Shown: piece by piece, positions 19,971-59,919 of the stretch
How positions within the stretch are numbered: position 1 is the stretch's first letter
How the letters are laid out: each line of letters opens with the position of its first letter
Assembly: GCF_006345805.1 (NCBI RefSeq)
Contig: NC_043017.1
Span: 28,582,001-28,646,000, forward strand
Source: Octopus sinensis
Lineage: Eukaryota
DNA length: 64,000 nucleotides
Reading direction: 5' to 3'
Notes under the pieces: model-generated
What the model was told of the DNA's origin: nothing
Database searches by the model: none
The model's input: the letters and a program-made list of their open reading frames with translations, nothing else
Translations under genes and position numbers: made by a program

Positions 19971-21156
19971 ATTTCTTTACTATCCACAAGGGGCTAAACA
20001 GAGAGAGGACAAACAAGGACAGACAAACTGATTAAGTCTATCATATCGACCCCAGTGCCAAATTGGTACTTAATTTATCGACCCCGAAAGGATGAAAGGC
20101 AAAGTCGACTTCGGAGGAATATTAACTCAGAACGTAGCGGCAGGCGAAATACCTATTTCTTTACTACCCGCAAGGGGCTAAACAGAGAAAGGACAAAGAA
20201 GGACAGACAAACGGATTAAGTGGATCATATCGACCCCAGTGCGTAATTGGTACTTAATTTATCGACCCAGAAATGAAGAAAGGCAAAGTCGACCTCGGCA
20301 GAATTTGAACTCGGAACGTAACGGCAGACGAAATACGCCTACGCATTTCGCCCGGCGTGCAAACGTTTCTGCCAGCTCACCGCCTTCAATTTACTCCCTT
20401 TGTCTGTTTCTTTACTACCCACGAGGGGCTAAACAAGAACAGACAAACGGATTAAGTCGATTACATCGACCACAGTGCGTAACTGGTACTTAATTTATCG
20501 ATCCCGAAAGGATGAAAGGCAAAGTCGACCGCGGCGGAATTTGAACTCAGAACGTAGCGGCAGAGGAAATACCTATTTCTTTACTACCCACAAAGGGCTA
20601 AACAGAGAGGACAAACAAGGACAGACAAACGGATTAAGTCGATTATATCGACCCCAGTGCGTAACTAGTACTTAATTTTTCGACCCTGAAAGGATGAAAG
20701 GCAAAGTCAACTTCGACGGAATTTCAACTCGGAATGTAACGGCAGACCAAATACCTATTTCTTTACTGCCCACAATGGGCTAAACACAGAGGGGACAAAA
20801 TAACGGATTAAGTCGATTATATCGACCCCAGTGCGTAACTGGTACTTAATTTATCGACCCCGAAAAGGGTGAAAGTCAAAGTCGACCTCGGCGAATCTGA
20901 ACTCAGAACGTAGCCGTAGGCGAAATACCTATTTCTTTACTAGCCACAAGGGGCTAAACACAGAGAGGACAAACAAAGACAGGCAAACGGATTAAGTCGA
21001 TTATATCGACCCCAGTGCGTAACTAGTACTTAATTTTTCGACCCCGAAAGGATGAAAGGTAAAGTCAACGTAGGCGGAATTTGAACTCAGAACGTAGCGG
21101 CAGACGAAATACGGCTACGCATTTCGCCCGGCGTGCTAACGTTTCTGCCAGCTCGC
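19971..21156 (-). mobile_element. Six-unit head-to-tail SINE-B array
   Basis: Two full heads and four 5'-truncated units; junction gaaatac|ctattt at 20152, 20572, 20754 (caaatac) and 20928; flanked by cgcactcatatct on both sides. Confidence 0.92.
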
Positions 21157-21529
21157 CGCACTCATATCTCTGTAAGATTTACTTAATCGCAACTAACTCC
21201 TCTTATGATACTACAGCGTATTCTCATCCCAATAAAATTTGCACTATAATGTGATAAGAGAATTCTGTATAGGAGTAATGCGGTTTGTGTATTTTAAGAC
21301 AATCCATAAACACATCGCAGTGCATTTTGACACATCTCCCAAGAGAAGACGTATTACTTCAAATAATTGTTTCGTCAAGTAGCTCCACAGTAGGGAGAGT
21401 GGCGAAGCAAAATGCATTTCGACGCAATTAGCTCCATGTAGAAATCTCCATTGAAGTGGAATCCATTATCGAACATGCTAACACTCCATATTCGAGTGAC
21501 GTTTACGGCATCGTCTATTATAGTTATAT

Positions 21530-21676
21530 ATGTGTGTGCGTTAGTGTCTGTGTGTGTGTGTGTGTGGGCGTGCGTGCGCCAATGTGTGTGCTTCTGTGGG
21601 GGTGTGCGCGTATGTTCAAATACATACATATATATATGTGTGTGTGCGTGTGTGTGTGTGTATATTTATGCATGTA

Positions 21677-21727
<51 letters not shown>

Positions 21728-21866
21728 GTATGTATATATATATGTATGTATATATATATATATATGCATATATATATGTATGCATATATATATGTATATA
21801 TATATATATATATATGCATATATATATGTATGCATATATATATATATATATATGCATATATATATA

Positions 21867-21920
<54 letters not shown>

Positions 21921-21930
21921 GTATGCAAAT
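21530..21930. repeat. (TG)/(TA) microsatellite
   Basis: Dinucleotide tract. Confidence 0.9.
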
Positions 21931-22324
21931 ATATGTATATAATGCATTGTGAGAGATATTGATTTACTGTATTCACTGTCACTCAAGAAAACCGAGAACA
22001 AAGTCTCCGAAGAGAAGGAGAAACTACCTACTCACAGAAAGGCGCCAATGTTAAGCCCTCGGCTCCAACGTCACCTGAATTATACGCTATGAGCAGTTCG
22101 TCCTCTCTGACAGTAGTACCAAACCTTAAAGTCTTGTGAGTGTGAAACCGCCAATTTTAATCGGAATATTGTTCAGCAAAATCTTGCAAGACGCTCTAGT
22201 GTAAGAGTTCTAGGTAGCCACACAATAGGGTTGATATTTTCTCGAAAGATCGCGAAAACCTTTGCTCAATTATTCCTAGATCGTGTGAATGATTGAGAAC
22301 TATAGTTCCTTGAACTAATATTCC

Positions 22325-22510
22325 TTGTATTGTTTGTCTTGTACTCTGCTTTTTCGTTGTTAAAAAAAGTCCGTATCCTTGTTTGATTTTATGTTTTCGT
22401 TTCTCGTTGTGTTCTACGTTTATTTGTGGTGTCCTGTACTCATATGTGCATGTATATATACATATAGATGTAGGTATGTACATATATGTATGTATGCATA
22501 TGTTTTATTT
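22325..22510. repeat. Interspersed repeat, second copy at 26470-26660
   Basis: ttgtcttgtactct...gttttcgtttctc(g/a)ttgtgttc...ggtgtcctgtactcatat shared by both loci. Confidence 0.75.
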
Positions 22511-23069
22511 ATTAAATTGTTATTATATGAATGAACGCCACGCCTCCTTTCTTCTTCTCCAAGTAAGTTTTTATTTCTATAGTTTATGGATCTGGTTTGC
22601 TACAGATACAGCAGAATTTCGATCTATGTCTCCTTAAAAATCTAATTTCCCTCCGGGTTCAGCACACATTTATTCCCCGCTTCATTTCTAGTTATGGCGG
22701 CAGTAAAGTTCGTCGGAAAACTAGAGACCTTTCTTTTCTTTTCCCAGAACAGGGAACTCCAGAACTTATCTAGATAACAAAATGTGTCCATTCTCCTGAA
22801 TCTGGGTAGATATGGGCTCTTTCTGTTCCGCATATAAATTATGCTCCCATGCATTAACCTATCGTAGATTGCGGCATTTTTCAACTATATAGAGCTAGCA
22901 CGGAGTCGTTCTCTGGCGTATCTTTGACCATACCCGGGACCTAGTGGGATAAATTTTCACAATAGATTCCTCATTTTGAAACAAGATGGACCCACCCACG
23001 GGTAACAAGGTGGTTATACCCTAGGGTTGATTTATGACTACATCTCAAAGCAAAGCGTACGACTAAAGA

Positions 23070-23290
23070 AATGCTGAAAAGTTCCTCACATTAAGTAATA
23101 GAACATACAGGAGGGTCACTTAATTATGATTTTATTCAATATATTCTCTTCTCAGATTCACACAATTATTGCAACAGTCTCTCAGGTTTCCTAAGCTCTT
23201 TAAAAAAACTCGAGAGCTTGCGCCTCCAAATATGCCCTTTGCGATACCTTTAAAGCCACGCACTTTTCAGCTCATCCACGTATTTCCAGT
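23070..23290 (+). mobile_element. Degenerate mariner-like terminal fragment
   Basis: gctgaaaagttcct...tctcagattcacac...gcctccaa; similar to 23478-23680. Confidence 0.5.
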
Positions 23291-23477
23291 GAAAGATAGA
23301 TGAGAAAATTAAAGTACGGTACTCTATACGAAAGTTTGTGTTACTCTATACGAAAGTTTGTGTAGAGCACGTACGGCAGAACTTGGAACTTAATATCCAG
23401 TACTAGAAACTACAAAATCGATATGTATCATATTGAAGTCCTATAGTATACTTTACTATATTATATGATGATATTCG

Positions 23478-23680
23478 AGAGGGGTACTCAAAAGTTACTG
23501 GCTTTGAGCAAAAGAAAATACAAGAGTGTTACTTAATTATTATTTTAGCTAACCTATTTTCCTCTCAGGTGCACATACTTATTGAAGCAGTCCTTCTGTT
23601 TTTCTAAGCTCTGTAGAAGAACTCGGAATGTTGGGCCTCCAACCAGGCATTTTGAGATACGCTTAAAGACAGCGACTCGT
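23478..23680 (+). mobile_element. Mariner-like terminal fragment
   Basis: cgagaggggtactcaaaagttactggctttg resembles TACGAGGG-type mariner TIRs; the same motif recurs at ~25960-26000. Confidence 0.55.
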
Positions 23681-57734: not shown

Positions 57735-57974
57735 ATTCGTCATGTTTATAGAACTTTTTTTATTTTTCCATTTCTTTAGTTTTCATAGAAGGATTTTTTG
57801 CTTTCGTGTTAAAAGGGAAATGGAAACCCCTCTAATGTCATCTCAAAAGTAAATAAATGGAGAAAGTGTCTTTAGGGAATTGAACCAAGAAACACGTGGT
57901 ATCATATCATGAAATGCTTAGAAAGCTAATTTACGAGCAATTCTCAATCTCCCTATTGTACTTGATCTTCAGCA

Positions 57975-57985
57975 AATTATTATTA

Positions 57986-58026
<41 letters not shown>

Positions 58027-58138
58027 TATTATTATTATCATTATTATTATTATTATTATATTATTATTATTATTATCATTATTGTTATTATTATTATTAT
58101 TGTTATTATTATTATTATTATCATTATTATTATTATTT

Positions 58139-58169
<31 letters not shown>

Positions 58170-58261
58170 TGTTATTATTATTATTATTTTATTATCATTA
58201 TTATTATTATTTTCATTATCATTATTATTATTATTATGATTATTATTATTATTATTCTTAC

Positions 58262-58333
<72 letters not shown>

Positions 58334-58477
58334 CATCATCATTATTATGATTACTATTATTATTATTATTATTGTTTGTTGTTGTCGAAGTTGTGTTTGT
58401 TCATGATGATATTGTTGCTCTCGTTGGTGATCTCAGAGGTGGTGCTGTTGTTGTTATTAGTGGTAGTAGTGTAGTAA

Positions 58478-58533
<56 letters not shown>

Positions 58534-58915
58534 ATGCTGGTTGTGGTGTTGGTGGTGCTGGTGATAATTGTATTATAATTACTCTTATTTCTATAATTGC
58601 CGCTGTTGTTGTTGTTATTGTTGCTTTTCTTCTTGGTGTGGTTGTCCTTCTTCCTCTTCCACTTCTTCTACTTCTATTTCTGTTTCTACTTCTTCGTACA
58701 TTGTTATTGTTATTATTATTCACCTTGCACTTTTATTGATGTCAGTATCTACACATAGATATTGGCACGACCCTAGCTCCGTACTGGTCCTTTGTGGTCA
58801 ATTACATGAATCATCGTCAAAAATCATCATGATCGTCATTATCATCATCATCATCATCCTCATCAGCAGCAGCAGGATCATCATCATCATCATCATTTTC
58901 ATCTCGTTGTTGTTA
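57975..58915. repeat. Chain of trinucleotide microsatellites (ATT, GTT, AGT, CTT, ATC)
   Basis: Successive low-complexity tracts. Confidence 0.9.
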
Positions 58916-59322
58916 TGACAAAATACTGCTATAAAGCAAATTAAACAATCCGAAAAAATCTTCGCGAAACCATGACAATGCTATTAGCTATTATAACAAT
59001 CGGTAATATAATAAGAGTAAATCGAATAATATATTTTCATTAAAATAAATGATACAATCATTAAGTTTGGCACCGAACACAAAAGTGCACCTTTTACCCT
59101 TTTAGTTTCGCTATATTCTTGACACTTTGCGCTAATGACATTTGCGAGATGAAAATTACAATTATTCCTTCGTATGTTGCAGTGTTGACAAGGATATCTC
59201 TTACTGGAAGGAGTAAGATTTAAGAGCATCAGTTGAAAATGTGTGAATAAAAGGGTCACATACTATATTATTAAATTTGTAAGTATATATGTATATTCAT
59301 AAACGTAAACAAATATAGATAT

Positions 59323-59919
59323 ATTTCTTTACTGCCCCCAAGGGGCTAAACATAACGGAGACAAACAAGGACAAACAAAGGGATTATGTCGATTATATTG
59401 ACCCCAGTGCGTAACTGGTACTTAATTTATCGACCCCGAAAGGATGAAAGGCAAAGTCGACCTCGGCGGAATTTGAACTCAGAACGTAACGGCAGACGAA
59501 ATACCTATTTCTTTACTACCCACAATGGGCTAAGCATAGAGGGGACAAACAAGGACAGACATAGGTATTCAGTCGACTACATCAACCCCAGTGCGTTATT
59601 GGTACTTAATTTATCGACCCGAAAGGATGAAAGGCAAAGTCGACCTCGGCGGAATTTGAACTCAGAACGTAACAACAGACGAAATACCTATTTCTTTATT
59701 ACCCACAAGGGGCTAAACACAGAGGGGACAAACAAGGACAGACATAGGTATTAAGTCGATTCCATCGACCCCAGTGCGTAACTGGTACTTAATTTATCGA
59801 CCCCGAAAGGATGAAAGGCAAAGTCAACCTCGGTGGCATTTGAACTCAGAACGTAACGACAGACGAAATACCGCTAAGCATTTCGCCCGGCGCGCTAACG
59901 TTTCTGCCAGCTCGCCGCC
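59323..59919 (-). mobile_element. Three-unit head-to-tail SINE-B array
   Basis: One full head plus two truncated units; gaaatac|ctatttc junctions at 59504 and 59687. Confidence 0.93.

What the first reader, a model, noticed from the sequence alone, without database searches (positions are those of the whole stretch)
19971..59919. SINE-B concatemers share one invariant junction at three separate loci
Seen: eight junctions (after 20152, 20572, 20754, 20928, 43233, 43403, 59504, 59687) read aaatac|ctattt on +. In SINE sense, the tail end ...AAATAG is joined to GTATTT in the tRNA-like head. Each block starts with a full head and continues with ~170-183-bp units cut at the same base. That base is the 3' edge of the loop in the head hairpin GAAATGC-TTAGCG-GTATTTC, and the tail end GAAATA can pair with the same TATTTC strand. 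Inference: random 5' truncation would not give this precision. Candidate mechanisms: (a) the RNA is cleaved at the anticodon-like loop and RT jumps template end to end; (b) the RNA is circularised and reverse-transcribed rolling-circle; (c) the SINE re-inserts into its own head, with the 5' join hidden by homology; (d) all arrays descend from one concatemeric master. SINE-derived tandem arrays are known in other animals, but I do not know of this fixed-junction system being described.
Basis: partly seen in the sequence, partly recalled or inferred. Interest (0 to 1): 0.8.

Follow-up and report, generated by a model that had tools for sequence, protein, structure and literature searches.

The report
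Multi-unit SINE copies sharing one inherited junction
An octopus-type short retrotransposon (SINE) occurs at three unrelated places as one promoter-bearing head followed by 2-4 head-less repeat units, and the identical join between units is most likely inherited from a multi-unit source element, a kind of SINE-derived tandem array already described in reptiles and clams.

Summary
AAATAC|CTATTT occurs 8 times against 0.05 expected, at the stated positions, in three loci with unrelated flanks. Each block has one full head followed by 166-184-bp units that start just 3' of the head hairpin's loop.

Four results support this:
- Direct repeats flank whole composites, never sub-blocks.
- No insertion ends at the junction position (9 joins and 0 ends there, against 2 joins and 7 ends at true 5' ends; p=0.002).
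- Junctions never carry the TAT(C) tail extension seen at 5 of 8 genuine 3' ends.
- The junction always reads G, the state of one head type, even in arrays whose own heads carry C and whose inner units share private mutations with the head unit.

A single fixed master is not supported. Unit number varies from 2 to 4, array C is a mosaic that includes a unit of another tail family, and unit trees are mixed and weakly supported. Recombination or homologous RT switching must be added.

Site-specific RNA cleavage with RT jumping remains possible (about 0.17). No further genome copies could be reached. Similar architectures are published for squamates and a blood clam, so I file this as a new member of a known kind.

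The parts
19961..19970 (.). Left copy of the 10-bp direct repeat ACTCATATCT (target-site duplication) flanking the whole A+B composite
   Evidence: The shared word extends to 13 nt if 3 nt that overlap the head's 5' end are counted. Neither A alone nor B alone has a flanking repeat.
19970..20152 (-). Unit A2, the 3'-terminal unit of block A, with a complete tail
20153..20336 (-). Unit A1, the head-bearing unit body. Shares 5 private substitutions with A2
20337..20386 (-). Head of block A (positions 1-47 plus the leading AA). G-type hairpin GCGTAGGC
20387..20404 (-). 18-nt non-SINE spacer (sense GACAAAGGGAGTAAATTG) between the tail of B and the head of A
20405..20572 (-). Unit B4, the 3'-terminal unit of block B. 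Carries an internal deletion
20573..20754 (-). Unit B3. Shares 5 private substitutions with B1
20755..20928 (-). Unit B2. Carries its own 10-nt deletion
20929..21112 (-). Unit B1, the head-bearing unit body
21113..21159 (-). Head of block B. G-type hairpin, lacks about 3-4 nt at the 5' end
21160..21169 (.). Right copy of the direct repeat ACTCATATCT
42915..42925 (.). Left copy of the 11-bp direct repeat TTTTATATAAT flanking the whole array C (C1-C4)
   Evidence: The repeat is AT-rich, so support is moderate.
42926..43068 (-). Unit C4: other tail family (A-type), starts at about position 70 of the SINE
43069..43233 (-). Unit C3: starts at the common junction but carries the A-type 3' region and tail (...GTAGAAAAGATT)
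43234..43403 (-). Unit C2 (SINE-B, internal deletion). Shares no private substitutions with C1
43404..43588 (-). Unit C1, the head-bearing unit body. Carries the subfamily markers of monomers 40495 and 41613
43589..43637 (-). Head of array C. T-type hairpin GCTTAGCG
43645..43655 (.). Right copy of TTTTATATAAT. Seven extra nt (43638-43644) lie between it and the head
59305..59312 (.). Left copy of the 8-bp repeat GTAAACAA flanking array D (weak). 59313-59321 is a TAT(C)-type tail extension
59322..59504 (-). Unit D3, the 3'-terminal unit. Lacks two of the three markers shared by D1 and D2
59505..59687 (-). Unit D2
59688..59871 (-). Unit D1, the head-bearing unit body. D1, D2 and copy 32495 share AATACCTATG
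59872..59921 (-). Head of array D. T-type hairpin
59922..59929 (.). Right copy of GTAAACAA
41608..41840 (-). Reference monomer with an exact 18-bp target-site duplication (41590-41607 and 41841-41858). Defines the SINE ends as AAGGCGGCGAG...GTAAAGAAATA
   Evidence: An uninterrupted copy of the host repeat at about 42440-42640 serves as the empty site.
51980..52117 (-). Tail-only fragment ...AATAAAGAAACA followed directly by (TATC)n. Shows that the natural 3' end carries a simple-repeat extension

Best explanation
The arrays are copies of a multi-unit variant of an octopus-type SINE. Each consists of one head (positions 1-47, carrying the putative A box and the 13-bp hairpin) followed by n copies of the segment from position 48 to the tail.

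The tail-to-position-48 junction arose once, or only a few times, in a source element and is identical at all loci because it is inherited. Multi-unit elements were then inserted as whole pieces by target-primed reverse transcription of a transcript that starts in the single head. The inner units lack the A box, so they cannot be promoters themselves.

Unit number (2-4) and unit composition changed afterwards or between rounds. Likely routes are unequal recombination or slippage (the two-unit periodicity in B) and homology-guided exchange with other SINE copies (the mosaic array C, and D3 against D1/D2).

Shown: the anatomy, the flanking repeats around whole composites, the invariance of the junction, and the shared private variants. 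Inferred: transcription of multi-unit RNA, the single origin, and the recombination steps. The founder event itself may have been an RT template switch or a DNA slippage at the hairpin; that cannot be told from this window.
For: 1. Direct repeats flank whole composites, and no sub-block has its own: A+B 10 bp, C1-C4 11 bp, D 8 bp. The flanks of the three loci are unrelated.

2. Position 48 is never an insertion end. There are 9 joins and 0 ends there, against 2 joins and 7 ends at true 5' ends (Fisher p=0.002). No solo unit starts at position 48.

3. Genuine 3' ends vary. AAAYA is followed by TAT(C)... in 5 of 8 cases, including (TATC)n at 52071. All 9 junctions lack any such extension or extra base.

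4. The cleanest monomer ends in ...AAATA, and the following G belongs to its target site. The junction G is therefore best read as the base 3' of the tetraloop in T-type heads.

5. Arrays A and B have G-type heads, with C at that base as part of a compensatory U.G to G-C pair. Their four junctions nevertheless read G, although A2 and B3 share 5 private variants each with the head units A1 and B1.

6. The variant 62C occurs in 5 of 8 inner units but in only 1 of 10 head units and monomers.

7. B shows a two-unit periodicity: TRF gives 88% matches at period 358 against 83% at period 182, and B1-B3 differ by 7.7% and B2-B4 by 9.0% against 10-13% for the other pairs.

8. The consensus unit has no T4 run, so a Pol III transcript could run through the units.

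9. The same architecture is published for other animals (PMC10702118, PMC11481361).
Against: - Arrays are not copies of one fixed master. Unit numbers differ. C1 and C2 share no private variants. C1 groups with true monomers. C3 belongs to another tail family yet starts at the same junction. D3 lacks two of the three markers shared by D1 and D2.
- Both head types carry arrays.
- All of this needs added recombination or homologous template switching, which is assumed rather than shown.
- The left side of the junction sits at the natural end of the SINE body, and the right side sits at a structural landmark (the loop edge). Both are what an RNA-end mechanism would predict.
- Only 12 units at 3 loci were available, bootstrap support is at most 67%, and no genome-wide data could be reached.
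- Pol III transcripts of 0.6-1.2 kb are unusually long.
Confidence: 0.6

Rival explanations
1. Recurrent formation. SINE RNA is cut or carries a block at the 3' edge of the head tetraloop. The LINE reverse transcriptase runs off there and jumps to the 3' end of another SINE RNA, or the same one, adding one unit per jump until it reaches a full 5' end.
For: - Mixed composition of arrays: C1, C2 and C3 come from different subfamilies or families, and D3 differs from D1/D2.
- Arrays occur with both head types.
- Non-homologous tail-to-elsewhere joins do occur in this window inside single insertions: the B tail plus 18 nt joined to the A head, C3 joined to C4 at about position 70, and the 40273/40495 dimer.
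- The junction coincides with the end of the SINE body and with a loop edge.
Against: - No insertion ends at position 48 although 9 joins occur there (p=0.002).
- There is no TAT(C) extension or extra base at any of 9 junctions, while 5 of 8 true 3' ends have one.
- The junction base is G even where the related head unit has C.
- 62C is enriched in inner units.
- A polymerase that has already copied the 3' arm has no structural reason to stop at the loop. The tools do not support a tRNA-like fold that would attract tRNA-processing enzymes.
Confidence: 0.17
2. Repeated re-insertion. New SINE copies are targeted to a nick at position 47/48 of an existing head, and the 5' join is resolved by homology between the two heads, which hides it.
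For: It gives one head plus units and keeps the outer target-site duplication. It would allow units of different families in one array, as in array C, because the families share the head.
Against: - Other insertion sites show no resemblance to the head site, so there is no sign of such target specificity.
- There are no by-products, such as a full or 5'-truncated copy sitting inside a head.
- In B, later insertions into a G-type head should give a C at the junction, but all read G.
- There is no age gradient from the 5' to the 3' units.
Confidence: 0.07
3. Independent DNA-level tandem duplication at each locus, by replication slippage or unequal exchange steered by the hairpin.
For: In-array relatedness (A1/A2, B1/B3) and the two-unit periodicity in B show that DNA-type array dynamics do occur.
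Against: There is only 0-1 nt of direct microhomology at the two breakpoints, so nothing would steer three loci to the same base. Using the TAG shared by loop and tail would give a different junction. Mosaic units in C and D are not explained.
Confidence: 0.05
4. Circular RNA copied by rolling-circle reverse transcription.
For: The tail GAAATA can pair with TATTTC next to the junction, bringing the ends together (third fold: -7.3 kcal/mol).
Against: - A circle made of positions 48 to the tail has no head, yet every block begins with a full head.
- Units within an array are not uniformly related: C1/C2/C3, and B1/B3 against B2/B4.
- The inner tails lack the TAT(C) extension.
Confidence: 0.02
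5. Segmental duplication of one array, or an assembly artefact.
For: None found.
Against: The flanks of the three loci share no similarity. Units differ by 8-14% and carry different private deletions. The assembly gap is far from all arrays.
Confidence: 0.01

Closest known systems
SINE-derived satellites (sSat) of squamate reptiles (Vassetzky et al. 2023, PMC10702118)
   Same: Both are tandem repeats whose unit is a defined part of a SINE, with a longer terminal unit reaching the SINE terminus. The same unit limits are shared by many separate loci in a genome. Some variants have a unit made of part of the head plus body plus tail, about 179 nt. Alternating two-unit patterns are reported.
   Different: Here the arrays are short (2-4 units), not homogenised (8-14% divergence), flanked by target-site duplications and always start with a head. 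This looks more like a retrotransposing multimer than a satellite. Chromosomal location is unknown. The host is a cephalopod.
TSD1-(SINE)n-TSD1 multimers in the blood clam Scapharca broughtonii (PMC11481361)
   Same: Also a mollusc. The first SINE has a complete head, the inner copies are truncated in the head at one position, the last copy has a complete tail, and one target-site duplication surrounds the whole. Arrays that include elements of another family are also reported.
   Different: The clam paper describes inner units with clearly truncated 3' tails and attributes arrays to unequal recombination. Here only the simple-repeat extension of the tail is missing. Whether the clam junction is shared between loci is not stated in the passages I read.
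Dimeric or multimeric SINE families that amplify as one unit (Alu-type dimers; full-length Dip/B1 multimers in jerboa, as cited in PMC10702118)
   Same: Several SINE-derived modules are transcribed from one 5' promoter and inserted together. The junction is identical in all copies by descent.
   Different: Those families have a fixed module number, or consist of full-length units each with its own head. Here unit number varies and the inner units lack the 5' 47 nt.
Octopus CORE-SINE OR2 (Ohshima and Okada 1994, cited in PMC4758252)
   Same: Probably the same or a related monomer family. It is a cephalopod SINE with a Pol III-type head, and by eye the central region resembles the CORE domain.
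   Different: No reference sequence was available, so identity is untested. No multimer form is mentioned in the papers I could search.

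Membership tests
SINE (non-autonomous, LINE-dependent retroposon) | Short, dispersed copies flanked by variable target-site duplications | tested here: met
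   About 10 heads and more than 20 fragments in 64 kb. An exact 18-bp duplication surrounds monomer 41608-41840, with an empty-site copy of the host repeat for comparison.
SINE (non-autonomous, LINE-dependent retroposon) | 3' tail ending in a simple repeat or LINE-like end | tested here: met
   ...AAAGAAAYA is followed by TAT(C)-type repeats in 5 of 8 ends, and by (TATC)n at 51980-52073. No partner LINE was identified.
SINE (non-autonomous, LINE-dependent retroposon) | tRNA-derived head with a cloverleaf and A/B boxes | tested here: inconclusive
   ARAGORN found no tRNA. Rfam gave no tRNA match even at E<=10. The head folds as a 13-bp hairpin. The A-box-like TGGCAGAAACG and B-box-like GAGTTCAAATTCC motifs were seen by eye only.
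CORE-SINE / octopus OR2 | Sequence homology to the CORE domain or the OR2 consensus | not testable with these tools
   No SINE reference library is on hand. The resemblance to MIR/CORE is recalled from memory only. OR2 is named as a CORE-SINE in PMC4758252.
SINE-derived tandem arrays (sSat / TSD1-(SINE)n-TSD1 multimers) | The tandem unit corresponds to a defined part of a SINE, with a longer terminal unit reaching the SINE end | tested here: met
   The unit runs from position 48 to the tail. The 5' unit carries the full head and the 3' unit the full tail.
SINE-derived tandem arrays (sSat / TSD1-(SINE)n-TSD1 multimers) | Same unit limits at several independent loci | tested here: met
   8 identical SINE-B junctions plus one to another tail family, at 3 loci with unrelated flanks.
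SINE-derived tandem arrays (sSat / TSD1-(SINE)n-TSD1 multimers) | One target-site duplication around the whole array | tested here: met
   A+B 10 bp (strong), C 11 bp AT-rich with a 7-nt offset (moderate), D 8 bp (weak). None around sub-blocks.
SINE-derived tandem arrays (sSat / TSD1-(SINE)n-TSD1 multimers) | Satellite properties: long arrays, homogenised units, heterochromatic or subtelomeric location | tested here: not met
   The arrays have 2-4 units that differ by 8-14%. Location is not testable. It should therefore not be called a satellite.
Multimeric SINE family amplifying as a unit | Position-specific diagnostic substitutions shared between loci | tested here: inconclusive
   62C occurs in 5 of 8 inner units against 1 of 10 head units and monomers, and the junction G is independent of head type. 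However, there is no consistent unit order, and trees are mixed with weak support.
RT template-jump chimeras | The junction joins true RNA ends, which are also seen as insertion ends, often with extra bases | tested here: not met
   0 insertion ends at position 48. No tail extension and no extra bases at 9 junctions. Three other joins in the window do look like such chimeras.

The most novel reading that the evidence does not exclude
The junction is not inherited but is re-made at each retrotransposition. Under this reading, SINE RNA is cut (or carries a blocking modification) exactly 3' of the head tetraloop. The partner reverse transcriptase then switches to the tail of another RNA, or the same one, helped by tail/3'-arm pairing. 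The element would thus concatemerise itself in a programmed, site-specific way.
Probability: 0.17. Interest if true: 0.7.

Novelty: new member of a known kind. Interest (0 to 1): 0.3.

Why it matters
SINEs make up roughly a tenth of octopus genomes (11.6% in O. vulgaris, PMC13282606). In this window about half of the loci of this family, and 12 of 17 units, sit in multi-unit arrays. If that holds genome-wide, copy counts, age landscapes and 'SINE burst' estimates built on RepeatMasker fragments would be distorted. A multimeric subfamily would also need its own consensus.

The arrays offer a tractable case of the early step from dispersed SINE to tandem repeat, which is still mechanistically unresolved in the reptile and bivalve reports. 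They matter more if the minority reading (site-specific RNA processing plus template jumping) proves right.

Tried and rejected
- **More genome copies by DNA pattern.** I scanned for the junction 27-mer and 18-mer in metagenome contigs and the 18-mer in genome contigs and viral contigs. These returned 0, 103, 64 and 10 stretches. BLAST with the SINE against the metagenome stretches matched none of them. The genome and viral stretches were not BLAST-checked; the genome ones sit in records titled as bacteria or archaea, the viral ones in IMG/VR viral contigs, each with a single match, so I take them as chance hits.
- **More genome copies by protein.** The antisense ORF that spans a junction was searched against the protein collection. 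It gave a single protein on a 543-bp ENA contig, L001, which is a monomer. The collection evidently lacks cephalopod SINE ORFs, so I did not spend the other two searches.
- **tRNA identity of the head.** ARAGORN and Rfam, at gathering threshold and at E<=10, found nothing.
- **Pairwise distances as a test of in-array relatedness.** This was uninformative, because copies of one source differ by the same amount whether or not they sit in one array. I used shared derived variants instead.
- **NJ bootstrap.** Support was too weak to decide.
- **Microhomology-driven slippage at TAG or GAAAT.** Rejected, because each would give a different junction sequence.
- **The Albertin 2015 octopus genome paper.** It is not held in the library.

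Full report
**Observation.** Tandem Repeats Finder reports periods of 182-185 bp at 19965-21112, 43250-43589 and 59322-59872. Reading the sequence and a BLAST map of the element show a SINE whose sense strand is the minus strand at all three loci.

**The monomer.** Its ends are fixed by copy 41608-41840. That copy has an 18-bp target-site duplication and sits inside another repeat, of which an uninterrupted copy lies nearby. The monomer reads AAGGCGGCGAGCTGGCAG...GTAAAGAAATA.

**The blocks.** There are four blocks, each with one head followed by units that begin at GTATTTCG (position 48 when GGCGGCG starts at 1):
- B: head plus 4 units.
- An 18-nt non-SINE spacer.
- A: head plus 2 units.
- C: head plus 2 units, then two units of another tail family.
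- D: head plus 3 units.

**The assembly gap.** The only run of N (37057-37156) lies about 5.8 kb from the nearest array and about 16 kb from the next. It has no bearing on the finding. Units differ by 8-14%, so the arrays are not an assembly artefact.

**The head.** ARAGORN and Rfam do not recognise a tRNA, even at E<=10. 'tRNA-like' therefore rests only on A-box and B-box resemblance seen by eye. The head folds into a 13-bp hairpin with a UAGC tetraloop (z about -4.6).

Two head types occur. The T-type reads GC-U-UAGC-G-GU and the G-type reads GC-G-UAGC-C-GU.

**What surrounds the arrays.** A 10-bp direct repeat, ACTCATATCT, flanks the whole B-spacer-A composite. Three further matching bases overlap the head end. 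Neither A nor B alone has a flanking repeat.

An 11-bp repeat flanks C1-C4 as a whole, with 7 extra nt next to the head. An 8-bp repeat flanks D; this one is weak. The 1-kb flanks of the three loci share no similarity. These are therefore three independent insertion sites, each occupied by a composite.

**Relations among units.** Pairwise distance is uninformative here, because any two copies of one source differ by the sum of their private changes. Shared derived substitutions are informative:
- A1 and A2 share 5.
- B1 and B3 share 5.
- A and B together share 195T and 157A.
- D1, D2 and the 5'-truncated copy at 32495 share AATACCTATG. D3 carries only one of those three changes.
- C1 shares its markers with the true monomers 40495 and 41613, and shares none with C2.
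- C3 has the 3' region and tail of another SINE family, yet begins at the common junction.

B also shows a two-unit periodicity. TRF gives 88% matches at period 358 against 83% at period 182, and B1-B3 and B2-B4 are the closest pairs within B. An NJ tree mixes array units with monomers, with bootstrap support of at most 67%. The arrays are thus neither copies of one fixed master nor purely local duplications.

**Inherited or re-made?** Several observations bear on whether the junction is inherited or re-made each time.

1. *Position 48 never behaves as an end.* There are 9 joins there and no insertion that stops there. True 5' ends show 2 joins (A to B, and 40495 to 40273) and 7 insertion ends (Fisher p=0.002).
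2. *Real 3' ends are variable.* After AAAYA comes TAT(C)... in 5 of 8 ends, including a tail fragment followed by (TATC)n. None of the 9 junctions has such an extension or any extra base.
3. *The junction base does not follow the head type.* In the cleanest monomer the tail ends in AAATA, and the next G is target DNA. The junction G is therefore best read as the base 3' of the tetraloop in a T-type head. Arrays A and B have G-type heads, with C at that base. All four of their junctions nevertheless read G, although the inner units A2 and B3 share private variants with the head units A1 and B1.
4. *An inner-unit marker.* The variant 62C is present in 5 of 8 inner units but in only 1 of 10 head units and monomers.

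Each of these is expected if the junction is an internal, inherited part of a multi-unit template. Each is awkward if RNA ends are joined anew every time.

The mosaic arrays and the presence of arrays with both head types point the other way. They can be reconciled with inheritance only by adding homologous exchange between SINE copies or RNAs. The SINE literature invokes this as 'mosaic evolution' and RT template switching (PMC4758252; PMC11481361), but it is not shown here.

**Mechanism proposed.** A source SINE acquired an internal tandem duplication of positions 48 to the tail. Because the inner units keep the B-box-like motif but lack the A-box region, only the 5' head can drive transcription. 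That explains why every block starts with a head. The consensus unit contains no T4 run, so read-through is possible.

Multi-unit RNA was then inserted as a whole, which gives one target-site duplication per composite. Unit number changed by unequal exchange or slippage.

Three other joins in the window lie inside single insertions: the B tail plus 18 nt joined to the A head, C3 joined to C4 at about position 70, and the 40273/40495 dimer. These show that non-homologous switching or adjacent insertion also happens at scattered positions. Such an event may have created the founder junction.

I put about 0.6 on this model. I put about 0.17 on recurrent RNA-end joining at the loop, and less on re-insertion into heads, independent DNA duplication and rolling-circle copying. 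Rolling-circle copying cannot explain the full head on every block.

**Comparison with known systems.** Squamate SINE-derived satellites have tandem units equal to a defined part of a SINE and a longer terminal unit reaching the SINE end. The same unit limits recur at up to thousands of loci (PMC10702118).

The blood clam has TSD1-(SINE)n-TSD1 multimers. The first copy has a full head, the inner copies are truncated in the head, the last copy has a complete tail, and some arrays include other families (PMC11481361).

The present arrays meet those structural criteria but not the satellite criteria of long, homogenised arrays. They behave more like a multimeric SINE subfamily. My literature searches found no description of this in octopus. 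OR2 is the published octopus CORE-SINE, but I could not test identity with it.

**Limits.** No additional genome copies could be obtained. The junction scans of metagenome, prokaryote-genome and viral collections gave only what look like chance hits (the metagenome stretches were BLAST-checked; the others were judged from their record names and single matches). The protein route gave one monomer on a 543-bp contig. All inferences rest on 12 units at 3 loci.

**Verdict.** This is a new member of a known kind, of modest interest, with a minority reading that would be considerably more interesting.

Noticed in passing
window 40273-40727 (+): Two full-length SINE-B copies lie head to tail. They are joined by an A9 run that replaces the first copy's normal tail (GGGTAAAAAAAAA|GGCGGCGAG). 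The first copy lacks about 9 nt at its 5' end. This is a different kind of join from the common junction.
   Followed up: partly
window 42926-43233 (-) and 38733-38950 (+): A second SINE family shares the head and central region with SINE-B. It has a different 3' region and tail (...CCCCAAA..GTAGAAARGATT, or ...GGCAAAATTTGGAAAC inside an (ATT)n tract). Two of its units are built into array C.
   Followed up: partly
window 51980-52117 (-); also 35332-35566, 51486-51789, 53997-54156, 5578-5626: A tail-only SINE (or partner LINE) fragment runs straight into (TATC)n. The window holds several long ATAG/ATCT-type microsatellites that might have grown from such tails.
   Followed up: partly
window 41560-42000 and 42440-42640 (-): Two copies of another repeat family (...GACTG[CT]GGCCATGCTGGAGCACCGCCTTTA...CATCGGTTGTCAAGC...GGGGACAA...). 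One is interrupted by SINE-B monomer 41608-41840, which gives an exact filled-site and empty-site pair.
   Followed up: partly
heads at 9377, 38771, 43582, 59865 (T-type) and 20330, 21106, 40302, 40530, 41784 (G-type): The two head types differ by a compensatory change of the loop-closing pair of the 13-bp hairpin (U.G against G-C). This suggests the hairpin matters for source-gene activity.
   Followed up: partly
window 19961-19970, 32661-32668, 40724-40731: Three independent SINE-B 3' ends are followed by ATATGAG (AGATATGAGTG, CATATGAGTG, CATATGAGGT). This may be a target-site preference or a tail variant.
   Followed up: no
window 5773-8283, 14576-16454, 4785-5218, 49047-49609: Very long microsatellites: (TATATACA)n of 2.5 kb, (TA)n of 1.9 kb, and (TAA)n/(ATA)n of about 0.5 kb each.
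   Followed up: no
window 55675-56193: A 274-bp unit present 1.9 times at 97% identity. This is a young tandem duplication unrelated to the SINE.
   Followed up: no
L001 (ENA metagenome contig ERZ23499442 scaffold_285125), 179-398: A related SINE monomer (86% identity) on a 543-bp contig of a metagenome assembly. It is probably cephalopod host DNA in that sample.
   Followed up: no
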